Below are positions 5,231 through 41,545 of a stretch of 64,000 nt of DNA, piece by piece (positions within the stretch are counted from its first letter, which is position 1; each line of letters begins with the position of its first letter). A program made the position numbers and the translations under genes. The notes beneath the pieces were generated by a model. The model was not told where the DNA came from and searched no databases. It saw nothing but the letters and a program-made list of their open reading frames with translations. This stretch comes from Rebecca billardiae RCC1528 (lineage: Eukaryota; Protista; Haptophyta). The stretch covers positions 2,604,001 through 2,668,000 of the forward strand of contig OZ251226.1 in NCBI GenBank assembly GCA_965240325.2, in the 5' to 3' direction.

Positions 5231-8200
5231 ATGCCGCGCACGGACATCATCCCGGGCGTCGAGATCCCAGAGGTGCTCGTCGGCAACCTCTACCCGAAAG
5301 ACGCGCCCGCAGACAAGAAGCTGATGAAGCAGGTGGCGCAGGAGAGCATCGTCTACGTGCTCGAGACGCGCGGCGGCGAGGGCAAGGACGCGTACGGCCA
5401 CGCGGAGGATGCGGTCGCGACTGCGAACAAGATCATTGACGCACAGATCAACTCGGTCCCGATCTTCTACAGCTGGAACAACGACGCCGAGCTCAGGAAG
5501 CTCGTGTTTGCGCCGAATGTGGTGGGTGTGGTCAAGAAGACGGGCGAGCTGCCCGCCTTCTCGCAGACCCAGCTGGACAAGCTGCTCATGGAGCTCGTGA
5601 CCTCGGGCAAGAAGGTCGGCGACGACATCTACAGCGCCGGCGTGCAGAAGCGCTTCAACACGCTGCTGGAGTCGCCGACCACCTCCGAGTACAAGCTCGC
5701 GGTGATCGAGTTCGTCGTGCCCGGCGCGAAGAACGGCGGCTCGGACAAGGGGCCCGACGGCCACCGCGTCGACTCCATCCCGATCGCGAACGGCATCGTC
5801 AAGGCCGGCGCGGCGTGCGAGCTCATCCGCTACGAGTTCGACAAGCACGACGATTTCGTCACCAAGGTCCAGGCGTACGACGCGGTGCTCGTGCGCATCA
5901 ACCCGGGCCAGCTGTCGCAGGGCACGTCCGAGGGCACGCAGGAGCGCTTCGACAAGGCGATGAACGACCTGCTCGCCGCGGGCAAGCTCGTGTGGTCCTC
6001 GCCGGGCGTGCAGACGTGCATGGGCGCCAAGGACGCGCTCGTCAAGATCGCCAACATGTCGTGCGGCCTGGTGGACACGTTCGCGTACTACGAGGCGTCC
6101 GAGCTGGAGGCGGGCTTCAAGAAGACGATGGCGTTCCAGCCGCGCGTGATCAAGCAGAACCGCGGCTCGGCCGGCGAGGGCATCTGGCTGTGCTGGCTCG
6201 AGGGCAAGGACTACTGCAAGAACTTTGGCGACGCGTCGCTGGAGGACGACGACAAGATCAAGCTGATGGAGATGAACGACAACCACGTCGAGCATCACAC
6301 CGTCAAGGAGTTCATCCAGTTCTGCGTTGGCGGTCCGGAGGCGGAGGGCGCCGGTGCGTGCGCGCCAGCGCGTGCCGAGCGTGCACACGCACCGCGCGTG
6401 CGTGCTCTCGCCGCGCTCACCTGGCCCGCCCCCCGCGCGCGCGTGCACGCTCGGCGCAGGCGAGTGGAAGTCGACGTTCCCGGGCAAGTACCTCGAGGGT
6501 GGCAAGGAGGCGGGCGGCCAGCTGGTGGACCAGCGGTTCCTGCCGCGCATCGAGGAGGGCGAGGTGCGCATGCTGATGGTCGGCCCGGTGCTGCAGATGA
6601 TGATCCACAAGAAGCCGGAGGGCGGCGGCCTCTCGGCCGTGGGCGGCAACTCGGCGTACACCTACTACAAGCCGGGCGACCCGCACTACGCCGGCCTGGA
6701 GAAGAAGTTCGTGCAGGAGGACATCCCGCAGCTGATGAAGGCGCTCGAGATCGAGAACGACCCGCTGCCCATCTTGTGGACGGGCGACTTCATCCCGATG
6801 GACGGCGCCGAGCCCGGCACCACCGAGTACGTCGTCGGCGAGTTCAACTGCTCGTGCGTCGGCATCTCCAAGTTCCAGGCGGTGTGCGGCGGCGAGAAGA
6901 CGCTCGCCGACGTGTCGGACGCCGACTACTACGACGCGTCGAAGCTGACCGACCTGATGGGCACGACCGCCATCAAGATGCTCCGCGCGAAGAAGTACCC
7001 GCGCAACAACACGCTGCTGCCGTCGCCGACCGACACCAAGTACAAGCTCGCGGTGATCGAGTTCGTCGTGCCCGGCGCGAAGAACGGCGGCTCGGACAAG
7101 GGGCCCGACGGCCACCGCGTCGACTCCATCCCGATCGCGAACGGCATCATCAAGGCCGGCGCGGCGTGCGAGCTCATCCGCTACGAGCACGACAAGCACG
7201 ACGATTTCGTCACCAAGGTCCAGGCGTACGACGCGGTGCTCGTGCGCATCAACCCGGGCCAGCTGTCGCAGGGCACGTCCGAGGGCACGCAGGAGCGCTT
7301 CGACAAGGCGATGAACGACCTGCTCGCCGCGGGCAAGCTCGTGTGGTCCTCGCCGGGCGTGCAGACGTGCATGGGCGCCAAGGACGCGCTCGTCAAGATC
7401 GCCAACATGTCGTGCGGCCTGGTGGACACGTTCGCGTACTACGAGGCGTCGGAGCTGGAGGCGGGCTTCAAGAAGACGATGGCGTTCCAGCCGCGCGTGA
7501 TCAAGCAGAACCGCGGCTCGGCCGGCGAGGGCATCTGGCTGTGCTGGCTCGAGGGCAAGGACTACTGCAAGAACTTTGGCGACGCGTCGCTGGAGGACGA
7601 CGACAAGATCAAGCTGATGGAGATGAACGACAACCACGTCGAGTACCACACGGTCAAGGAGTTCATCCAGTTCTGCGTTGGCGGTCCGGAGGCGGAGGGC
7701 GCCGGTGCGTGCGCGCCAGCGCGTGCCGAGCGTGCACACGCACCGCGCGTGCGTGCTCTCGCCGCGCTCACCTGGCCCGCCCCCCGCGCGCGCGTGCACG
7801 CTCGGCGCAGGCGAGTGGAAGTCGACGTTCCCGGGCAAGTACCTCGAGGGCGGCAAGGAGGCGGGCGGCCAGCTGGTGGACCAGCGGTTCCTGCCGCGCA
7901 TCGAGGAGGGCGAGGTGCGCATGCTGATGGTCGGCCCGGTGCTGCAGATGATGATCCACAAGAAGCCGGAGGGCGGCGGCCTCTCGGCCGTGGGCGGCAA
8001 CTCGGCGTACACCTACTACAAGCCGGGCGACCCGCACTACGCCAACCTGGAGAAGAAGTTTGTGCAGGAGGACATCCCGCAGCTGATGAAGGCGCTCGAG
8101 ATCGAGAACGACCCGCTGCCCATCTTGTGGACGGGCGACTTCATCCCGATGGACGGCGCCGAGCCCGGCACCACCGAGTACGTCGTCGGCGAGTTCAACT

Positions 8201-8358
8201 GCTCGTGCGTCGGCATCTCCAAGTTCCAGGCGGTGTGCGGCGGCGAGAAGACGCTCGCCGACGTGCCTGACGATGACTACTACGACGCGTCGGAGCTGAC
8301 CGACCTGATGGGCACGACCGCCATCAAGATGCTGGACGAGAAGAAGGCCGCAGCGTAG
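5231..8358 (+). CDS. Cj0069-family (ATP-grasp-like) protein with two near-identical full domains and a degenerate N-terminal partial domain, 3 exons
   Basis: Motifs GGSDKGPDGHR, RINPG, MGAKDALVK, DTFAYY, RVIKQNRGSAGEGIW, VDQRFLPRIEEGEVR, LWTGDF and GEFNCSCVGIS each occur twice. Introns at 6354-6459 and 7705-7810 (106 nt each). Confidence 0.8.
5657..8333 (+). repeat. Intragenic tandem duplication, period 1351 bp, including the intron
   Basis: tacaagctcgcggtg at 5690 and 7041. Introns at 6354 and 7705 appear identical; only scattered exon substitutions. Confidence 0.95.
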
Positions 8359-33090: not shown

Positions 33091-33785
33091 AATAGCAGTT
33101 TACTTTCGGGTCGCGTGATCTTATAGCGCCGAGCCCGGACTCCGGAGGATCGCTTCTGAAGCGCGCAGCAGTGTGAAATGAGTGCCTGACTCTGACTGAG
33201 TGATATGCCGGCTGCATGGCCGAGCTGACCGTAGGCAGCTGCCATGTTAGATGCCGATGGTAATATAGTTACTATACGTGTGATATCTGCCAAGAACTAC
33301 GATGTCGACAGTTGACTTCTCCTGGCTATGATGAGCAGCAACGACTGCGTGTAATGACGATAATTGTTGTGGACGGCCAAATCAGCGGTCGTCCGGCGCA
33401 GGCAGCCGCCAGGCGCCAGCCCGCGGCTCGCGGACCTAGGTGGGCGGTGGGCGAGGTTATGAAGCGCGTGCGCCACTGCCTTGGCCGCAACAGAAGAGCC
33501 GGTTTGGCGGGCGCGGGGTGATCGAAGGTGAGGTGGACACCGGTATCGTGCGAGCCAGTGGGCACTCTCACCAGTGGCAGGCTCCACAGCGCGCGCTGCC
33601 GCCCGCTGCAGAGTGGTCGCGCGGCTGGATTTTCGGTGGCCTGCTGCTTCCTCGCGGTCCTGCAGAGCGCTCGCTGCTTTTTATTCCGCCGGAAAACGAA
33701 ATAAATCAGGCTTTCGTCGCGCGTTCAAAACCGAGCAGCAGGCTGTGAGGCTGTTGTCGGCCGGGCCGCCATCGCCCGCTGCGGA

Positions 33786-36700
33786 ATGGCGAGTAGTAGG
33801 CCGAGCCGACTGGTCGCCTTTGCGGCCTTGGCGCTGGCGGCGTCGGGCGCCAGGGTACGGCGCGCGCGACCGGATGATGCGCTCGACGCGCATCAGCTCG
33901 CGTCCGCCGGCCCGACGCTCCTCGGCAAGGCCGAGCCCCATCCTCGCGGGTACGAGGTCGTGATCGGCGCGCTCTTCGCAGAGGACCCGAATGCGGGCGA
34001 GGCTGCCAGCCAGGAGCTGCTGGCGATGCAGCTCGCGCTCGACCGGCTCAACGCGCTCCCGGTCGAGGAGCGGGCGGGCATCACCCTCCGCCTCGCGCCC
34101 GCGTGGCCCAGCGCGACGGCGACCATCCCCGACAGCGCGTACAAGCTGCTGAAGGGCAACGCGACGACCCCCGGCGCGGTCGCGCTCATCTCGGCCCTCG
34201 CCTCGGACGCGCTGTCGAGCGTGCTCGCGCTGACCGAGGTCTTCGGCGTGATGGCCGTCAGCTACATCCCGTGCGCCCCCATGATCGCCGGCGGCACCGA
34301 CGCCGCCGCGCACGCGCGCGGCATCTTCCAGCTGCAGTACTCCGACCACACGCGCATGCGCGCGCTCGCCGACCTCGTCGTGTCGCTGCGGTGGAAGTCG
34401 GTGAACATCTGCTACCAGGAGACGGTGGGGTTCAGAGAGCTCGCGCGCGAGCTGACCAAGATGCTCGGCGGCGGGTGCGTCGGCGTCGACGCCTCGATCA
34501 GCATCCCGGCGGTGATGGAGGGGCGCGGCGCGCTCAGCCGCGCGGCGCGCGCGCTCGGGCGGACGCCCTCGTGGGTGGTGGTCGTCCTCGCGGACGACAG
34601 GTCGGCGCGGCGGCTGATGGACGAGGCGGCGGCGCAGGGCCTGGGCTCGCCGCCCTTCATCTGGCTGGGCGTCGAGCCCTGGTCCGAGCCCAGCTGGCGC
34701 AGCGATGCGTGCAGGCGGCCGCTGCACGCCGCCAGGCCGGCGCGCCGCCCGCACCGGCTGGGCAGCCGCTCGCGGCGCGCCGGCCGGCACGGCGCGGCGG
34801 ACGCGACGCAGCCGCGCGAGGGCGCGGCCGAGCGCGAGTGCGAGCACGGCGAGTCCGCGCCGATCGGCCCGCCCGGCACCGTCAGCCTCGCCACCTCGCA
34901 GGCCTTCCGCTCGCAGCCCCTCTTTGGGCGCTGGGTGCGCGAGGCGTGGGACCTGGACGCGCGCGTGGTCGCCAATGGCTGGAGCTGCCTCCGGCTGCTC
35001 GGCGCGAACGCGACGGGCGGCGGGGGCGCGGCGCCGGACAGCTCGTGCGTGCTGGCGGACACCCCGTTCGCGTACGACGCCGCGTGGCTGCTCGGCCGCG
35101 CCCTCGTCTCGAGCTGCAACGAGGTGCAGGACCGGCTCGCGCCGGACGAGTGTCTGCTGCTGCTCGGCGGCGCCGCGCGCGGCGTGATCCAGCTCATGTT
35201 CGAGCGGCTGTGGCAGGGCGTGACCGGGATGATCTCGTTCAGCCCGCTGGGCGCGCGGCGCGGCGCGGAGCTCACGCTCGCCAGCGTCGTGCGCGCGCCG
35301 GGCGCGCGCGCCGCGTGGGCGATGGTGAACGGCACGTGGACAGGCTCGGAGCTCGCCTCGCCGCTCGCGCTGCTCGATGCGACGCACCTGCCGCCCGGCG
35401 AGTGGCGGCTGCCCGACGGCGTGGCGGGCTGGGGCGAGCTGCTGCGCTGGGCGGGGACGGAGCCCGGCCGGATCCCGCACTCGCGCGCCTACGCGCTCCG
35501 CATCGGCCGCTCGCTCACCCTCGCGCTCCGGCTGGCGGTGGGCGCGTGCGCGGCACTCACGCTCGGCCTCGCAGCAGCCATCCCCGGCATGCGCGCGTGG
35601 CGCGAGTTCGCCCACTCCGGCCCGATGGCGTTCAGCCTGATGCTGTGCGCCGCGACGCTGTGCGCGGAGGCGAGCCTGATGGTCTCCACCTTCCCCCGCG
35701 TGCCGATCGGCGTGGTGCGCATCCTCGACCTCGTCGCCGTGACGTTTGTGATCACGTCCCTCGTGTGCAAGGCGATCGCGCTGCACTGGTTCGTGCGCAC
35801 CAACAGCCTCACGCTGCGCATGCTCGGCAAGGGGCAGATCGGCGTGACGCTCGGCGTGGTCGGCGTGCAGCTGCTCTGCGTGGCGCTCCGCGCGTGCATC
35901 ATCCTGCACCCCGCCTTCGAGACGCCGCCGTGCATCTCCCTCTGGCGCGCGCGGCTGGTGCTGATGACAGACGTCGTCCTCTTTGTGTCGTGGTGGGTGA
36001 GCGCCGTCGTCGCGTTTGGGCTCACGCTGCACCTGCACCTCTCCTCGCTCGGCGCGGCGCTGTCGAGGACGTTCCTGCCCGACGCGCCGCTGCTCTTCCA
36101 CGCGTCGATCGCGGTCCTCGCGCACCTCGTGCTGCTCTCGCTGCTGCGCCTGCAGTCGCGCGGCTTGAACAGGGACGTCCTCGTCCAGTACTGTGAGCGA
36201 GCGCGCGCGCGCGCCCCGCGCGGAGACGGCGTGCGTGCGCGCGCGCGCGTACGCGCACCGCGCACCGCGCGCTCCCGCGCCGGGTGCGGTGGGAGGTCGC
36301 GCGACGCGCGCGAGCATGAGGCCGAGAGGGAGGGACGGGACGGGGGCTCGGCGGAGCGCGCGCAGTCTCTCGCCTGCCCAGTCGACCTGGCGCGCCGCCC
36401 CGGCCGAGTCCGCCGCGAGGCGCCGCGCTGCGCCACGCCTCGCACTGACCGCCCGCCCGCCCGCCCACGCCGCGCCGCGCCGCGCCGCGCCGCGCGCGGC
36501 TCTTCGCCCCCCGCGCGCGCACCGGCAGGCCCGCTGTGCCAGTTCTCCATGGCGCTGAGCGTGAACGCGCTCGTCTTCGGCCCGAAGATGCTGCCGCTGC
36601 TCCGCCGGCTGTGCGGCCGCGCCGACGCGCGCGACCCGCTCGACTACTCTGCGGGCGCGCTCGAGAAGCTCGTCGCCGCGCAGGAGGCGCTGCTGCAGCG

Positions 36701-39593
36701 CAGGCAGAGGCTGGTGCGCGAGACGGAGGAGACGCTCAAGAACTACCGCCGGCTGCGGCAGGCGAAGGGCACCGTGCTGCACGAGGGGTACGCTCGGCTC
36801 TCGGAGATCAGGCACCGAGAGCACGCGCGCCCCAGCGAGTACTGGCTCAGCCTGCTCGCCAACCGACAGCTCCTGTGCTACGCGCCGCGGCGGCGCGCGC
36901 GCTCCGGGCGGCTGCCAGGCGCGGGGCCGGCGCTCAAGCACGCGTCACGGATGGCGCGCGCCGCGTCGCGCTCGCTGCTGCCCGTGGCGAGCAGCGCGCA
37001 GCACCAGCCGATCGTGACGCGCGCCGGAGGCGCCGACTCGGACTCGGACCTGCAGCCAGCGCCGCGCACGCGCGCTGACTTTGCCGAGGCGCCGCGGCTC
37101 GTGCTTGACCTGCAGTCACTGGCGCGCGTGGCGGTCGAGGCGACCGCGCCATCGCTCGTGCTGCAGCTCGTCGACTCGAGCGAGCGCAAGATCGCGAGGC
37201 TCGAGGACGACACGGGCGGCTCGGAGTGGCGCGCGATGTTCGAGGAGCTGCTGGAGGCGCGGCAGCGCGGCGAGGCTCTCCGCCAGCGGCTGAGCGTCTG
37301 CGTGCTCAGCTGGAACATGGGCTCGACGCCGCCGCCGCCCGACCGCGTGAGCGCGACCGACGCGGGCTGGCTGCCGAGCGGCGCGCACGACATCTACGCG
37401 ATCGGGCTGCAGGAGTGCCACCTGGTGCGCAAGGCGGCCGCGGCGGACGGCACCGACGCGCTGCGCGACTACTTTGCGGCGCAGCTCGGCGATGAGTTCC
37501 GGCTGGTCGACAAGCCGATCCAGCTGTGGGAGCGGACGGCGGTGCTGCTCTTCTGCCACGCGCGCTGGCACGCGCACATCACCGACGTGCACGCGAGCAA
37601 GGAGAAGGCGGGCTTCAACGGGCTCGCGGGGAACAAGGGCGGCGTGTGCCTCAGCCTGCGCGTGGGCGAGACCTCGTTTGCCTTCCTCGCCGTCCACCTC
37701 GCCGCGCACGACGCGCACGCCGTGCTGCGCCACCACCACACGCGCATCCTGCTCAAGGCGCTGCGCCCGCCCGTCACGGTCGAGGCGGCGGGCGCCGAGC
37801 GCGCGTTCGCCAAGCACCACGACGTCACCTCGGTGTGCGACTACGTCTTCATGTTCGGCGACCTGAACTACCGGCTCGACGGGCTGAGCCGCGAGCAGGT
37901 GCTCGCGCTCGTCTCGCGCAACCAGCTCGGCACGCTGTACGCGCACGACCAGCTGCACGCCGCGATGCGCGTGGGCCGCGTGCTCTCGGGCTTCAGCGAG
38001 CTGCGGCCTCTCTTCCCGCCCACGTACAAGCTGCGGAGGCGCCGCCTCTCGATGGGGCGGCCGAGGGCGGCGGCGGGCGCGGAGCAGGGCGGCGCGCTCG
38101 ACGTGTCCTGCACCTGCTCGCCCGGCGGCGGCGCGCCGCCCAGCGCGACGAGCACGCCCGAGCACGGCCGCGCGGTCGGCTCGCCGCTCGTCTCGGCCAA
38201 GCGGCCCGGCTCGACGCCGGGCGAGCGCCGCGCGGGCGCGCCGCCGCGCCGCCGGCGGGAAGCCTTCTTCGACGCGCACGAGTTCCCGACGATCGTGGAG
38301 GGGGAGGTGGCCGCGAGCGCGCTGGGCGAGTCGGACTACGACCCGCACCGCACTCCGGCGTGGTGCGACCGCGTGCTCGTGTACGCGCGGCCGGGCGCGC
38401 GCGCGACCCAGCTCGGCTTCTGGAGCGCGCCGCGCTTGCTGCGCGAGCACGCGGCGAGCACGCTCGGCCTGCTGCCGAGCGACCACGCGCCCGTCGCCGC
38501 GTCGTTCGAGGTGGAGGTGCGCACGCTCAACGCGAGCGACGCCTCCGCGCGGATGTACGCCGCGTGGGCCGTCGCGCTGAGCAACGTGACGGTGCGCGTG
38601 TCGGCGAGCGCGGCGCACAGGCTCGCGCCCGCCTCGGCCAACATCGCCGTCACGGGCACGTGCCTGCGCGCGGGCGCGTCGCACGAGTCGGAGGAGGCGC
38701 GCGTCGAGCCGGGCGAGAGCGTGCTCGAGTTCCGCTGGGTCGGCGGCGCCGGCCCGGCGATCCGGCTCCTCGAGCGCCACTGCTGCTTCGAGCGCTCCTT
38801 CCTCTCGCACCACGCGGTCACGCTGCAGGTGCGCGCGCTCGCCTCGCCGGTCGTCGTGCTGGGCAACGCGGTGGTCAGCCTGCGCGACGCCGCGCTCTCG
38901 GGCAAGGCGGCGTTCGCCGAGCCGCTCCGCCTCTTCGGCGTGCACCACGGCGAGATCCGCGGCGAGGTGCACCTCTTCGACATGCTGCGCGAGCACACCT
39001 GCGGCCGGCAGCTCGACTCGAGCTCGACCGTGTGCCAAGTGAACGCGCAGCGGCTGAGCAACGCGAGCGCCGCCAGCGCCACCTCGGCCATCGCGCGCAC
39101 GCTCGGCATCAAGGGGCAGCAGCCGCCGAGCCCCGCGTCCGTCTCTGCGCGCTCCAAGTCGAGCGCGGGCGCCGCCGGCGCGGACGCCGCCGCCGAGATG
39201 CACGACGTGCAGGTGGAGACGCTCGACAGCGTGCCGATGGACGCGGACGCCTCCGCCTACCTCCACGACGACGACGACGACGACGACGAGAGCGAGTACC
39301 ACGCGATGCTCGCCTGGCGAGAGTTCTCGTCCGTCGTCTCGCTCTCGGCGGGCGGGATGACGGAGGAGCTCGGCGCGGACTCGAGCGTCGCGCCGACGAG
39401 CTCGGTCGATGGGGACTCGATGAACGCGACGGGCTCGAGCGTCGCGCGCTCCATGCGCCCGGAGGCGCGCGCGCTGGCAACGGCAGTAGCCGCGGCTGCC
39501 GCGCCGAGCAGGTCGACTCGGGCTGCGGAGCCTGGTGGCGCGAGCACCAACGCGCGCGAGGCCAGGCCGCTGCCGCCCGCCCACCCGCGGTAA
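33786..39593 (+). CDS. Class C (GABA-B-like) GPCR fused to PH, inositol polyphosphate 5-phosphatase and C2-like domains
   Basis: Signal peptide; Venus-flytrap/ANF-receptor motifs (VIGALF, LALDRLN, SDHTRMRALADLV..LRW, FAYDAAW, QGVTGMISF); 7TM region ending LVFGPK; coiled coil; PH-like region. IPPc motifs SWNMG, IGLQE, GNKGGV, HLAAH, FGDLNYR, FPPTYK, PAWCDRVL, SDHAPV. Probable in-frame intron at 36193-36528. Confidence 0.88.
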   Translation: MASSRPSRLVAFAALALAASGARVRRARPDDALDAHQLASAGPTLLGKAEPHPRGYEVVIGALFAEDPNAGEAASQELLAMQLALDRLNALPVEERAGITLRLAPAWPSATATIPDSAYKLLKGNATTPGAVALISALASDALSSVLALTEVFGVMAVSYIPCAPMIAGGTDAAAHARGIFQLQYSDHTRMRALADLVVSLRWKSVNICYQETVGFRELARELTKMLGGGCVGVDASISIPAVMEGRGALSRAARALGRTPSWVVVVLADDRSARRLMDEAAAQGLGSPPFIWLGVEPWSEPSWRSDACRRPLHAARPARRPHRLGSRSRRAGRHGAADATQPREGAAERECEHGESAPIGPPGTVSLATSQAFRSQPLFGRWVREAWDLDARVVANGWSCLRLLGANATGGGGAAPDSSCVLADTPFAYDAAWLLGRALVSSCNEVQDRLAPDECLLLLGGAARGVIQLMFERLWQGVTGMISFSPLGARRGAELTLASVVRAPGARAAWAMVNGTWTGSELASPLALLDATHLPPGEWRLPDGVAGWGELLRWAGTEPGRIPHSRAYALRIGRSLTLALRLAVGACAALTLGLAAAIPGMRAWREFAHSGPMAFSLMLCAATLCAEASLMVSTFPRVPIGVVRILDLVAVTFVITSLVCKAIALHWFVRTNSLTLRMLGKGQIGVTLGVVGVQLLCVALRACIILHPAFETPPCISLWRARLVLMTDVVLFVSWWVSAVVAFGLTLHLHLSSLGAALSRTFLPDAPLLFHASIAVLAHLVLLSLLRLQSRGLNRDVLVQYCERARARAPRGDGVRARARVRAPRTARSRAGCGGRSRDAREHEAEREGRDGGSAERAQSLACPVDLARRPGRVRREAPRCATPRTDRPPARPRRAAPRRAARGSSPPARAPAGPLCQFSMALSVNALVFGPKMLPLLRRLCGRADARDPLDYSAGALEKLVAAQEALLQRRQRLVRETEETLKNYRRLRQAKGTVLHEGYARLSEIRHREHARPSEYWLSLLANRQLLCYAPRRRARSGRLPGAGPALKHASRMARAASRSLLPVASSAQHQPIVTRAGGADSDSDLQPAPRTRADFAEAPRLVLDLQSLARVAVEATAPSLVLQLVDSSERKIARLEDDTGGSEWRAMFEELLEARQRGEALRQRLSVCVLSWNMGSTPPPPDRVSATDAGWLPSGAHDIYAIGLQECHLVRKAAAADGTDALRDYFAAQLGDEFRLVDKPIQLWERTAVLLFCHARWHAHITDVHASKEKAGFNGLAGNKGGVCLSLRVGETSFAFLAVHLAAHDAHAVLRHHHTRILLKALRPPVTVEAAGAERAFAKHHDVTSVCDYVFMFGDLNYRLDGLSREQVLALVSRNQLGTLYAHDQLHAAMRVGRVLSGFSELRPLFPPTYKLRRRRLSMGRPRAAAGAEQGGALDVSCTCSPGGGAPPSATSTPEHGRAVGSPLVSAKRPGSTPGERRAGAPPRRRREAFFDAHEFPTIVEGEVAASALGESDYDPHRTPAWCDRVLVYARPGARATQLGFWSAPRLLREHAASTLGLLPSDHAPVAASFEVEVRTLNASDASARMYAAWAVALSNVTVRVSASAAHRLAPASANIAVTGTCLRAGASHESEEARVEPGESVLEFRWVGGAGPAIRLLERHCCFERSFLSHHAVTLQVRALASPVVVLGNAVVSLRDAALSGKAAFAEPLRLFGVHHGEIRGEVHLFDMLREHTCGRQLDSSSTVCQVNAQRLSNASAASATSAIARTLGIKGQQPPSPASVSARSKSSAGAAGADAAAEMHDVQVETLDSVPMDADASAYLHDDDDDDDESEYHAMLAWREFSSVVSLSAGGMTEELGADSSVAPTSSVDGDSMNATGSSVARSMRPEARALATAVAAAAAPSRSTRAAEPGGASTNAREARPLPPAHPR

Positions 39594-40097
39594 TGTTGGC
39601 GCGGCGCGTGGCCGCCTACTGGCCTACTGCCGCCACTCCTCGCGGACGCACTCCACTCGTCGTGGCTCGTGCGCGCAGCAATACTGATGCCGCCAATCGT
39701 CATGAACAGCGCGCGCCCGTGTCAGTTTTCATCATCACTGCCATTGGCAGCCGCAGGCACGCCACGCACTACTCACGTACGAGACGAACTGTAACAGTTC
39801 TCGGCCGACGAGTCGCACTCACTTCGAGCGGCGGTACGCACAGTCTACTAGTACAGTTTATTTGTATTTTATTATATTATAACTAGCTACGTGCGTAAGG
39901 CTCACGGTTGCAGGTTGCCGCGCCATCCTTCATCGCACGCTCTCCGAAGAGAGACCTGGAAACTGGTTTTGAACGACCCATGACCTCAGACGCAAGAGCA
40001 CGCCAGTACTCCCACTCGACCACAGACCGTCGGCGTACTACTAGCAGTAGTACTTACTCTCAGTAGTCAGTCTCATACACGGTACGGTTCTTACGCG

Positions 40098-40255
<158 letters not shown>

Positions 40256-40260
40256 TAGTC

Positions 40261-41545
40261 ATGGCCCGCGGTGCAGGGCGGAGCGCGCAGCGTGGAGCCC
40301 GCACCAGCGGGCCCGAACCACGTTTCAAAAAGATCTTTGATCAAGAAAAAAGGGACGGGCGGCGGCGGAAAAAAAGGGACGGGGGGCGATTTTTAGGGCT
40401 GGCGGAGACCGAGTTTCGAGTTTTTGAGATCGCATTGAGAGGTCTATCAGGCCAAAAAAAACCGCGCCCAGCTGATTCCCTTAAGTAAAGTGCGATCTGG
40501 ACGTCAGCTGGACGTGACATTAGTGTAACGGTTCGTTACGAGCGAATCGTACTCGTCTTCCCGGATCGCGTGACGTCCGGACTGGGCCACATCCGGATCG
40601 TCGGAGGTGACGTGCCCCGGCACGATGGGCGATGGCGGATATGCGGGACGGCGCCTGCACGTGCCTCCGGACCCGCCTCCCGCTTGCTGCTCACGCAGTC
40701 AGCTGCGACCGTGGCGCATGATCGCAGAAGCAGTGCCGGCAGTACGGCCTGCATCAGCTAGTGCCGCGCCGTCGTGGCGCGCGCGGTACGGTTGCGCGTT
40801 TGCAGCGCTCGCAGCTCGGCGACGGCACGCGCGTGCGGCTCAGGTGTGTCAAATGCGGTCTCGTCGGCGCGCTTTCGCCTGCCACCTCGTGCACCCGTGC
40901 CGCCAGTTTCATCGTCTTCATGAGGACTGCTGCTGCTGTCGCCATCCGCTCTCCATCACCCCGAGTCGCCGGTCGCGCGGCGCGCGCGGTAGGCACTAGG
41001 CAGGGCGTACGGTCACTCACCCGTGCAACGGGTCAAGTGGCCAGAGTACGTCTGGTCGTTGGCTGGCACGGGCCGCAGCGCTAAAGCACCCTGCTGTCAC
41101 ACCCGACTCCTTCAGTACTCCGAGCTCCGCGGCACGACTCACTCGGCACGATCGCGGACGGGTCGGATCCGAGCTGATCAGCCAGAGTTGGACACAGTTT
41201 GGCAGCTACTAGTAGTAATTCCGATGCCGATGGCACGATCGCGGACGGGTCGGATCCGAGCTGATCAGCCAGTTGGACATTTGGCAGCTAGTTGTCAGAC
41301 GGACGTCCGATTTGACGACCGGTGCCGGGTGCGGTCTCAGGTCCGCTGCTGTGATTGTGTGAAGTGTGAATGAGTCTCGCGGTCGCGCAGGCAGGGCGAC
41401 GGTCGGACTAATATAGCTTCAGTCATCTCAGAACCGACTTCAACTGGCGAACTGCCACTACGGCGGAGAGCCGCGATTGCACGGCCACCGCGGGCCCCCA
41501 ACTGCGTTGATTCTATGCAGAAAAGGACCGCAGAACGCGGTCATA
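40261..41545 (+). mobile_element. Helitron2/Helentron-like non-autonomous element E2
   Basis: First ~100 bp are nearly identical to 15626 onward. Subterminal caccgcgggcc at 41486-41496; hairpin gaccgca-gaa-cgcggtc at 41526-41542 plus ATA. Interior appears unrelated to E1. Confidence 0.7.

What the first reader, a model, noticed from the sequence alone, without database searches (positions are those of the whole stretch)
33786..39593. Receptor-enzyme chimera: Venus-flytrap class C GPCR fused to PH and inositol 5-phosphatase
Seen: one reading frame joins signal peptide, VFT, 7TM, coiled coil, PH, an intact-looking 5-phosphatase (GDLNYR, PAWCDRVL, SDH) and a C2-like domain. Known: GPCR-PIPK and GPCR-INPP 'bigrams' are described mainly in oomycetes; I do not know of a characterised GABA-B-like VFT receptor fused to a 5-phosphatase. 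Inference: a ligand-gated phosphoinositide phosphatase coupling extracellular small-molecule sensing directly to PI(4,5)P2/IP3 turnover, conceptually parallel to voltage-sensing phosphatases.
Basis: partly seen in the sequence, partly recalled or inferred. Interest (0 to 1): 0.8.

Follow-up and report, generated by a model that had tools for sequence, protein, structure and literature searches.

The report
Flytrap receptor fused to lipid 5-phosphatase
A very GC-rich alga has one intact gene that joins a glutamate/GABA-B-type "Venus flytrap" seven-helix surface receptor to a complete SHIP-like phosphoinositide 5-phosphatase, a receptor-enzyme design related to the oomycete "GPCR-INPP" proteins but built from different parts, found nowhere else in my searches, and so far without evidence of expression or activity.

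Summary
Window 33786-39593 (+) is one 1935-codon ORF with third-position GC of 0.97, and no GC-poor spacer separates the receptor from the enzyme.

Confirmed parts:
- A Venus flytrap domain (Pfam ANF_receptor, E 3e-14).
- Seven hydrophobic helices.
- A 5-phosphatase (Pfam E 6e-41) that keeps every catalytic and near-invariant residue.
- A C2 domain packed on the phosphatase as in SHIP1/2 (Foldseek E 1e-31).

Not confirmed:
- The PH domain has no sequence or fold support.
- The class C identity of the helices rests on language-model features and motifs. Pfam 7tm_3 gives no hit.

New here: a 336-nt stretch (36193-36528) between helices 6 and 7 lacks codon periodicity and has GT..AG ends. It is probably an in-frame intron, so the single open frame is partly luck.

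No protein with this architecture appeared in three large protein searches, a metagenome scan or the papers searched. The known GPCR-INPP "bigrams" (oomycetes, Nannochloropsis) lack a flytrap; the one relative I retrieved has a cAMP-receptor/secretin-type 7TM.

Verdict: a new variant of a known kind. Direct ligand control of the phosphatase is inference. No RNA run was listed. Earlier notes of this scan report other receptor-enzyme fusions elsewhere in the same genome, one of them 7TM plus an INPP4-type phosphatase; I did not check them.

The parts
33786..33851 (+). Start codon and signal-peptide-like N-terminus (aa 1-22; hydrophobic core aa 9-22)
   Evidence: First ATG after an in-frame stop. 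The hydrophobic segment was read from the translation. No signal-peptide predictor was available.
33948..35420 (+). Venus flytrap (ANF_receptor/PBP1) ectodomain, aa ~55-545. Pfam covers aa 77-303. A low-complexity coding insert lies at aa ~305-365. There is no cysteine-rich domain before TM1.
   Evidence: Pfam PF01094 E 3e-14. mGluR6/8/4 VFTs E 1.5e-7 to 3e-5. GC3 is 0.98 through the insert. Atlas feature hits are 7tm_3+ANF_receptor clusters at 0.95.
35511..36158 (+). Transmembrane helices 1-6 (aa 576-791)
   Evidence: Kyte-Doolittle peaks of 1.9-2.35. Atlas features of aa 560-802 alone are nearest to 7tm_3 clusters at 0.88. Pfam 7tm_3 gives no hit.
36193..36528 (+).
   Evidence: Codon periodicity is lost: GC by phase is 0.87/0.82/0.84 against 0.72/0.55/0.97 in the exons. 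The donor is ACT|GTGAGC and the acceptor GGCAG|G. Clear introns of a neighbouring gene have the same GC-rich GTG(C/A)G...GCAG style. Removing it leaves an 18-aa loop before TM7. There is no transcript evidence.
36543..36608 (+). Transmembrane helix 7 (aa 920-941) with a class-C-type Pro-Lys motif (P933-K934)
   Evidence: Read from the sequence. PMC3727952 describes the PK motif in TM7 as conserved in class C GPCRs.
36648..36761 (+). Heptad-patterned helix directly after TM7 (aa ~955-992), a candidate coiled coil
   Evidence: Leu/Val recur at 7-residue spacing over about 5 heptads. Not tested with a coiled-coil predictor.
36774..37265 (+). Unverified.
   Evidence: Only a strand pattern and a C-terminal Trp helix (W1148), by reading. 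The AF2 model of its second half shows a beta hairpin plus a helix at pLDDT 51-67. No Pfam, PDB or pairwise support.
37281..38510 (+). Inositol polyphosphate 5-phosphatase catalytic domain (aa 1166-1575), with a 95-aa low-complexity coding insert at aa 1419-1513 (nt 38040-38324)
   Evidence: Pfam PF22669 E 6e-41. PDB INPP5B/SHIP2/OCRL/synaptojanin E 1e-20 to 1e-11. N1177, E1210, H1304, D1359, N1361, R1363, D1528, R1529, D1566 and H1567 are conserved; only N1316H and T1275A differ from near-invariant columns. Homologues skip the insert. GC3 is ~1.0 inside the insert. The AF2 core has pLDDT mostly >85.
38565..38981 (+). C2-type beta sandwich packed after the phosphatase (aa ~1594-1732), as in SHIP1/SHIP2
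   Evidence: AF2 model mfd9922154ada. The top 25 Foldseek hits are SHIP1/SHIP2 Ptase-C2 structures, E 1e-31 to 1e-25, TM by target 0.78-0.84, ~580 aligned columns. They rank ahead of phosphatase-only structures. Homologues that align here carry Pfam C2 and C2_SHIP1-2_2nd. The ORF itself has no direct Pfam C2 hit.
38982..39593 (+). Low-complexity C-terminal tail (aa 1733-1935, with a poly-Asp run at aa 1828-1834) and the stop codon
   Evidence: Translation. No Pfam hit. GC3 falls to 0.85 over the last ~50 codons.

Best explanation
This is one real gene of at least two exons. It encodes a type-I-oriented receptor, in this order: signal peptide; Venus flytrap ectodomain joined directly to a divergent class-C-type 7TM core; a cytosolic tail made of a heptad helix and a poorly defined PH-like linker; a catalytically competent SHIP-type 5-phosphatase with its C2 domain. 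Seven helices place the phosphatase on the cytosolic face, permanently tethered next to its likely substrates PI(4,5)P2 and/or PI(3,4,5)P3. Proposed mechanism (inferred): ligand closure of the flytrap rearranges a receptor dimer, as in class C GPCRs and in ANF-receptor guanylyl cyclases. The helix after TM7 passes this movement to the Ptase-C2 module and changes its access to the membrane. Binding of an extracellular small molecule is thus turned directly into 5-dephosphorylation of phosphoinositides. Shown: gene continuity, the domain identities (VFT, 7 TM helices, 5-phosphatase, C2) and an intact catalytic site. Inferred: class C identity of the helices, dimerisation, the coupling, the substrate and the ligand.
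For: Continuity: the single ORF has GC3 of 0.97 across the TM7-to-phosphatase junction, and no GC-poor spacer lies inside it. VFT: Pfam E 3e-14 and mGluR VFT hits. 7TM: seven hydrophobic segments spanning ~250 aa after intron removal. The nearest language-model feature clusters are all 7tm_3 with or without ANF_receptor, at 0.95 for exon 1 and 0.88 for TM1-6 alone. The sequence also shows a PK motif in TM7, an acidic D766 at the inner end of TM6 and a basic K662 at the inner end of TM3, features that PMC3727952 lists for class C. Phosphatase: Pfam E 6e-41 and all catalytic residues kept. SHIP-like Ptase-C2 fold: E 1e-31. Precedent for receptor-enzyme logic: GPCR-INPP and GPCR-PIPK bigrams (PMC5784254, PMC6033456).
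Against: No transcript evidence: no RNA run was listed. No orthologue or paralogue with the same architecture was found, so nothing shows that selection maintains the fusion. Pfam 7tm_3 gives no hit even at E<=10, and a single-sequence AF2 model of the 7TM was too poor (pLDDT 51) to give meaningful fold matches. The PH domain and the coiled coil are unverified. Haptophytes are reported to have most G-protein signalling components (PMC3971589), so ordinary G-protein coupling is not excluded. The 95-aa insert inside the catalytic domain and the N1316H change could affect activity.
Confidence: 0.5

Rival explanations
1. It is a conventional G-protein-coupled class C receptor with a tethered phosphatase. 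The 7TM signals through heterotrimeric G proteins as usual. The constitutively active 5-phosphatase tail only localises lipid turnover near the receptor, as feedback or termination of PIP2/PIP3 or IP3 signals, or for trafficking. The ligand does not gate it.
For: Haptophytes are reported to keep most GPCR pathway components, with lineage-specific G-alpha expansions in Emiliania (PMC3971589). The inner ends of TM3 and TM6 keep K662 and D766, residues described as important for GABA-B activation (PMC3727952). A long disordered linker (aa ~1035-1100, pLDDT <45) lies between the membrane and the enzyme, which argues against rigid mechanical coupling.
Against: Nothing here tests G-protein coupling. 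The heptad helix directly after TM7 and the authors' own reading of bigrams as possible G-protein bypasses (PMC5784254) leave direct coupling equally open.
Confidence: 0.3
2. The fusion is not a functional unit. It could be a recent, lineage-specific gene fusion or an assembly join that is not expressed as one protein, for example through an internal promoter or alternative splicing that gives separate products. It could also be a young pseudogene that is still open because stop codons are rare at 75% GC.
For: No homologue with the architecture exists in any database searched. No RNA run was listed. Antisense ORFs of 1086 and 822 aa over the same DNA show that long open frames arise by chance in this composition. 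An 85%-GC intron has roughly even odds of staying open (my estimate, about 0.56).
Against: GC3 of 0.97 with GC2 of 0.55 is kept in one frame for 5.4 kb, including the junction. All catalytic and near-invariant phosphatase residues are intact. No GC-poor intergenic spacer of the kind that flanks the gene is present inside it.
Confidence: 0.1
3. The seven helices are not a class C GPCR core. They are another polytopic membrane module that merely anchors a flytrap sensor and a phosphatase. The protein would then resemble the single-pass flytrap receptors of this genome more than a GPCR.
For: No Pfam 7tm_3 hit and no PDB sequence hit. The fold searches returned only generic helical bundles. No Cys in the first extracellular loop is available to pair with C716 in the second.
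Against: All top language-model neighbours are 7tm_3 families, even for TM1-6 alone. The span is the ~250 aa expected of a 7tm_3 domain, the loops are short, TM7 has the PK motif, and a VFT sits directly upstream as in GABA-B-type receptors.
Confidence: 0.1

Closest known systems
GPCR-INPP 'GPCR-bigrams' of oomycetes and Nannochloropsis (van den Hoogen et al. 2018, PMC5784254; PMC6033456)
   Same: One polypeptide carries an N-terminal 7TM receptor and a C-terminal inositol polyphosphate phosphatase domain that faces the cytosol. The same idea was proposed for them: a receptor acting directly on phosphoinositide turnover. They are likewise biochemically uncharacterised.
   Different: Those proteins are drawn as a bare N-terminal 7TM without a flytrap. 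The one metagenomic relative of that type that I retrieved (P0109) has a 7tm_2/Dicty_CAR-type 7TM and shares only ~28 bits with this phosphatase domain. In the tree it pairs with another protein, not with this ORF, though the tree is unresolved. Here the receptor is VFT plus a class-C-type 7TM and the enzyme is a SHIP-type Ptase-C2. The published distribution is oomycetes plus Nannochloropsis only; for haptophytes only GPCR-PIPKs were reported.
SHIP1/SHIP2 (INPP5D/INPPL1) phosphatase-C2 core
   Same: The 5-phosphatase is followed immediately by a C2 domain packed against it. These are the best structural matches (E 1e-31, TM by target ~0.8). The catalytic residues are conserved. A possible PH-like element lies upstream, as with the SHIP PH-R domain (that parallel is from my knowledge and was not tested).
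   Different: No SH2 domain, no NPXY or proline-rich tail, and ~20% identity. The enzyme is anchored by a 7TM receptor instead of being recruited through phosphotyrosine. There is a 95-aa insert in the catalytic domain.
Class C GPCRs of the GABA-B layout, and the divergent class C receptors of diatoms and other microeukaryotes (PMC3727952; PMC3971589)
   Same: The VFT joins the 7TM directly, without a cysteine-rich domain. TM7 has the PK motif and a heptad helix follows it. The nearest language-model clusters are diatom 7tm_3+ANF_receptor families.
   Different: The 7TM is too divergent for Pfam 7tm_3. The best VFT sequence matches are group III mGluRs. In that alignment the mGluR motif SYAST lines up with SYIPC here. 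The diatom paper says the C-termini of its receptors resemble no known protein, whereas this one carries an enzyme.
Voltage-sensing phosphatases (Ci-VSP) and ANF-receptor guanylyl cyclases
   Same: These are analogies of mechanism only: a membrane sensor domain coupled through a short linker or helix to a cytosolic enzyme. In VSP the enzyme is a phosphoinositide phosphatase. In the cyclases the sensor is a VFT and the linker a coiled coil. (From established knowledge, not tested here.)
   Different: There is no homology of the sensor (VSP has a voltage sensor) or of the enzyme (VSP has a PTEN-type phosphatase; the cyclases have a cyclase domain). Coupling is unproven here.

Membership tests
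Class C (Glutamate, 7tm_3) GPCR | Extracellular Venus flytrap (ANF_receptor/PBP1) ligand-binding domain | tested here: met
   Pfam PF01094 E 3e-14, aa 77-303. mGluR6/8/4 VFTs E 1.5e-7 to 3e-5. Only profile positions 2-219 of 353 are matched, and a 60-aa insert follows.
Class C (Glutamate, 7tm_3) GPCR | 7TM domain recognisable as 7tm_3 (PF00003) by profile or fold | tested here: inconclusive
   No Pfam hit at E<=10 on the pieces or E<=1 on the whole ORF. No PDB sequence hit. The single-sequence AF2 model has pLDDT 51 and its fold searches are meaningless. Language-model neighbours are all 7tm_3, at 0.95 and 0.88. The spliced 7TM was not searched as one piece.
Class C (Glutamate, 7tm_3) GPCR | Seven helices with the N-terminus outside and the C-terminus inside, and short loops | tested here: met
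   Seven hydropathy peaks at aa 576-791 and 920-941. The loops are 5-18 aa once 36193-36528 is removed.
Class C (Glutamate, 7tm_3) GPCR | Motifs listed in PMC3727952: PK in TM7, an acidic residue at the inner end of TM6, Lys/Arg at the inner end of TM3, and an ECL1-ECL2 cysteine pair | tested here: inconclusive
   P933-K934, D766 and K662 (and R671) are present, by reading without an alignment. C716 is in ECL2 but there is no Cys in ECL1.
Class C (Glutamate, 7tm_3) GPCR | Coupling to heterotrimeric G proteins | not testable with these tools
   Needs experiment.
GPCR-INPP bigram (van den Hoogen et al. 2018) | A 7TM receptor domain followed in the same protein by an inositol polyphosphate phosphatase catalytic domain | tested here: met
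   Continuity of coding across the junction.
GPCR-INPP bigram (van den Hoogen et al. 2018) | Common descent with the oomycete/Nannochloropsis GPCR-INPP genes (related 7TM and related phosphatase domain) | tested here: inconclusive
   The only representative retrieved (P0109) has a 7tm_2/Dicty_CAR 7TM and a weak phosphatase match of 28 bits, against >100 bits for soluble Ptase-C2 proteins. The tree does not join them, but the ORF sits on a long, unresolved branch.
Inositol polyphosphate 5-phosphatase (IPPc / Exo_endo_phos2) | Family profile match and conserved catalytic residues (WN, QE, HLAAH, GDLNYR, PAWCDR, SDH) | tested here: met
   PF22669 141 bits. All invariant columns of 88 sequences are kept; the only differences from near-invariant columns are N1316H and T1275A.
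Inositol polyphosphate 5-phosphatase (IPPc / Exo_endo_phos2) | 5-phosphatase activity and substrate (PI(4,5)P2, PI(3,4,5)P3, IP3) | not testable with these tools
   Needs an enzyme assay.
SHIP-type 5-phosphatase | A C2 domain directly after the catalytic domain and packed on it | tested here: met
   AF2 plus Foldseek: SHIP1/2 Ptase-C2 E 1e-31, TM by target 0.79-0.84. Aligned homologues carry Pfam C2/C2_SHIP1-2_2nd.
SHIP-type 5-phosphatase | N-terminal SH2 domain | tested here: not met
   No SH2 in the Pfam scans. A receptor occupies the N-terminus. It is therefore SHIP-like in its core only and not a SHIP orthologue.
PH domain | Seven-strand sandwich capped by a C-terminal helix, or a profile match | tested here: inconclusive
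   No Pfam, PDB or pairwise hit. The model began at aa 1030, so only a hairpin and a helix were seen, at pLDDT 51-67.

The most novel reading that the evidence does not exclude
A chemically gated phosphoinositide phosphatase. An extracellular small molecule closes the flytrap, and the class-C-type dimer transmits this through the post-TM7 helix to a SHIP-like Ptase-C2. The receptor would then alter PI(4,5)P2/PIP3 directly, without G proteins. That would be a ligand-operated counterpart of voltage-sensing phosphatases, assembled independently of the oomycete GPCR-INPPs.
Probability: 0.3. Interest if true: 0.85.

Novelty: new variant of a known kind. Interest (0 to 1): 0.58.

Why it matters
Whether GPCR-bigrams signal by driving their own catalytic tail instead of G proteins has been an open question since they were described, and none has been characterised biochemically for the INPP type. 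This protein offers a favourable test case. Its sensor belongs to the best understood receptor class (VFT closure and dimer rearrangement). Its enzyme is a SHIP-type Ptase-C2 for which structures, assays and lipid biosensors exist. It also suggests that the receptor-to-lipid-phosphatase design may have arisen more than once, since it is built from different receptor and phosphatase subfamilies, and it extends that design to a GC-rich alga that earlier notes of this scan call a haptophyte. If the coupling is direct, it would be a natural ligand-controlled PIP2/PIP3 phosphatase, which would also be of interest as a tool. The case is limited by the lack of orthologues and of expression data.

Tried and rejected
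- Word-based protein search of the whole ORF and of exon 1: no hits at all. Neither could supply an MSA or an architecture match.
- Word-based search of the phosphatase region among proteins of 1064-3386 aa: 117 hits, none with VFT or 7tm_3. One (P0109) is a 7tm_2/Dicty_CAR + phosphatase protein.
- Exhaustive HMMER with aa 570-1565: 4131 hits. All of the top 150 are phosphatase-driven, at 44% identity or less. The six long hits I checked are fusions with PDZ, zf-DNL, coatomer/PH_29, ankyrin, cNMP/RGS or PIP5K/EF-hand domains, not receptors. Only 150 hits are visible, so a weaker-scoring fusion could have been missed.
- Metagenome locus scan: pattern matches, none confirmed.
- Exact look-up of the ORF product: not on record.
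- RNA runs: none was listed, so read laying could not be used.
- PDB sequence searches of TM1-6 and of the PH-like region: nothing.
- Single-sequence AF2 of aa 555-960 (pLDDT 51), followed by Foldseek/PDB, VIA-wide and Atlas shape searches: only generic helical bundles. I treat these as uninformative, not as evidence against a GPCR fold.
- Phosphatase-domain tree: the ORF sits on a long branch (1.6) in an unresolved group of 62 that also holds SHIP2, the protist Ptase-C2 proteins and P0109. No origin can be read from it.
- Considered and rejected: that the Arg-rich stretch at aa 803-914 is a real extracellular loop (no codon periodicity, canonical splice sites).
- Considered and rejected: that the inserts at aa 305-365 and 1419-1513 are introns (GC3 stays at ~0.98-1.0, so they are coding).
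- Considered and rejected: that the antisense ORFs of 1086 and 822 aa are genes (by-products of GC content).
Full report
**Observation**

Window 33786..39593 (+) is one ATG-initiated ORF of 1935 codons. The DNA is ~75% GC, and antisense ORFs of 1086 and 822 aa overlap the same stretch, so length alone proves nothing.

Codon statistics show that it is real. Third-position GC is 0.95-1.00 in nearly every 60-codon window, and GC by position is 0.72/0.55/0.97 overall. GC in 150-nt windows never drops below 0.66 inside the ORF, while the flanks fall to 0.18-0.55. No intergenic-type spacer or frame change separates the receptor half from the enzyme half.

Between nt ~36170 and 36530 (aa ~803-914, an Arg/Ala/Pro-rich translation) the periodicity disappears: GC by phase is 0.87/0.82/0.84. 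The stretch starts with ACT|GTGAGC and ends with GGCAG|G.

Among GT..AG pairs whose length is a multiple of three, 36193-36528 (336 nt) has the strong GTGAGC donor. It joins ...VQY-C-PLCQFSM..., which leaves an 18-residue loop before the seventh helix. A neighbouring gene has unambiguous frame-changing introns of the same style: GC-rich, G|GTGCGT ... GCGCAG|G.

By my estimate, an 85%-GC intron of 112 codons has roughly even odds of containing no stop. The single open frame is therefore partly luck. The fusion does not depend on the splice, because the exons are in frame either way.

**Domains**

- **Flytrap (VFT).** Pfam finds ANF_receptor at aa 77-303, E 1e-12 on the whole ORF and 3e-14 on the piece. 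PDB sequence search finds mGluR6/8/4 flytraps at 1.5e-7 to 3e-5. No cysteine-rich domain lies between the flytrap and TM1, which is the GABA-B layout. In the mGluR alignment the receptor motif SYAST lines up with SYIPC here; from memory that motif contacts the amino-acid ligand, so the ligand cannot be assumed to be an amino acid.
- **Seven helices.** Hydropathy gives six helices at aa 576-791 and a seventh at aa 920-941. With a signal-like N-terminus, this puts the C-terminal half in the cytosol.
- **Class C identity is only partly supported.**
  - For it: language-model feature searches put exon 1 next to 7tm_3+ANF_receptor clusters (0.95, diatoms first) and TM1-6 alone next to 7tm_3 clusters (0.88). 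The sequence has P933-K934 in TM7, D766 at the inner end of TM6 and K662 at the inner end of TM3, features described for class C in PMC3727952.
  - Against it: there is no Pfam 7tm_3 hit and no PDB sequence hit. A single-sequence AF2 model (pLDDT 51) gave only generic helical-bundle matches.
- **Phosphatase.** The match to Pfam Exo_endo_phos2 is strong (E 6e-41), as are the matches to INPP5B, SHIP2, SHIP1, OCRL and synaptojanin structures. In an 88-sequence alignment, all invariant and nearly all near-invariant columns are kept: N1177, E1210, H1304, D1359, N1361, R1363, D1528, R1529, D1566 and H1567. Only N1316H and T1275A differ. A 95-aa low-complexity insert (aa 1419-1513) lies in the loop before PAWCDR. 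Homologues skip it, its GC3 is ~1.0, and the model leaves it disordered.
- **C2.** With that alignment, AF2 gives a confident catalytic core followed by a beta sandwich at aa ~1594-1732. The top 25 Foldseek hits are SHIP1/SHIP2 phosphatase-C2 structures (E 1e-31 to 1e-25, TM by target 0.78-0.84, ~580 aligned columns), ahead of phosphatase-only structures. Homologues that align over this part carry Pfam C2 and C2_SHIP1-2_2nd. The C2 claim is confirmed.
- **PH domain: not confirmed.** Nothing appears in Pfam at E<=10, in PDB, or in pairwise comparison with a PH_29-bearing relative. My model started at aa 1030 and so cut the putative first half. It shows only a hairpin and a Trp-bearing helix at low confidence.
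- **Coiled coil.** This is a heptad pattern at aa ~955-992, by reading only.

**Relatives and literature**

- Three large protein searches found no protein combining a flytrap or 7tm_3 receptor with a 5-phosphatase. Pfam checks of six long hits, a search with exon 1 and a metagenome scan found none either.
- The nearest phosphatase domains among the top ten hits are 31-40% identical. The ones with a source name come from scattered protists such as Thecamonas, Rhizamoeba and Ploeotia.
- One metagenomic protein (P0109) is a 7tm_2/Dicty_CAR + phosphatase fusion of the oomycete bigram type. It matches this phosphatase only weakly (28 bits) and does not group with it in an otherwise unresolved tree.
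- Papers describe GPCR-INPP bigrams only in oomycetes and Nannochloropsis. They are drawn as a bare N-terminal 7TM and are uncharacterised. For haptophytes only GPCR-PIPKs were reported (PMC5784254, PMC6033456).
- Class C receptors with flytraps are known from diverse protists, including a haptophyte (PMC3971589, PMC3727952). I found no enzyme-tailed example in the passages I read.
- My paper searches for a flytrap-phosphatase fusion found nothing relevant.

**Mechanism**

- **Shown:** a receptor-type ectodomain, seven helices and an intact SHIP-like Ptase-C2 lie in one coding unit, with the enzyme on the cytosolic side.
- **Inferred:** the receptor dimerises like class C GPCRs, and flytrap closure is relayed through the post-TM7 helix to the phosphatase. 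This would parallel voltage-sensing phosphatases and ANF-receptor cyclases.
- **Rivals:** the main one is a normal G-protein-coupled receptor with a constitutively active tethered phosphatase. A long disordered linker between membrane and enzyme and the reported G-protein toolkit of haptophytes keep it alive. A non-functional or mis-modelled fusion is less likely given the codon bias and the intact active site. It cannot be excluded, because no RNA run was listed and there are no orthologues.

**Context from this scan (unchecked AI notes)**

Other agents read this genome as a very GC-rich haptophyte, one of them as a pavlovophyte. They report many receptor-enzyme fusions in it, including a first-reader note of a 7TM fused to an INPP4-type 4-phosphatase on another piece. 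I did not test these notes. They suggest that this gene belongs to a lineage habit of wiring receptors directly to effectors.

**Verdict**

The gene is real and intact-looking, and its architecture is rare. It is a new variant of the GPCR-bigram idea: a class-C-type flytrap receptor plus a SHIP-type Ptase-C2. Its function, expression and conservation are untested.

Noticed in passing
window 5270-8349 (+), especially 6320-6460 and 7670-7810: A neighbouring gene changes frame twice across two nearly identical ~100-nt GC-rich introns. The exon ends before them are also identical (…GGCGCCG|GTGCGTGC…GGCGCAG|G). This indicates a tandem duplicated exon-intron unit about 1350 nt apart.
   Followed up: partly
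window 40050-40350: A sharp AT-rich island (GC 0.18-0.39 in 150-nt windows) lies ~450 nt downstream of the gene's stop codon, in a window that is otherwise 55-80% GC.
   Followed up: no
window 33681-36941 (-) and 37116-39584 (-): Antisense ORFs of 1086 and 822 aa lie over the receptor-phosphatase gene. They are by-products of the extreme GC3 of the sense strand and should not be read as genes.
   Followed up: partly
window 38040-38324 (+) and 39267-39287 (+): A 95-aa Pro/Ala/Gly/Arg-rich coding insert lies inside the phosphatase catalytic domain. A run of seven Asp lies in the C-terminal tail. Their function is unknown.
   Followed up: partly
another piece of the same genome (note s1-343793): A first-reader note reports a 7TM receptor-like domain fused to an INPP4-type phosphoinositide 4-phosphatase. 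If real, this genome holds more than one receptor-lipid-phosphatase fusion.
   Followed up: no
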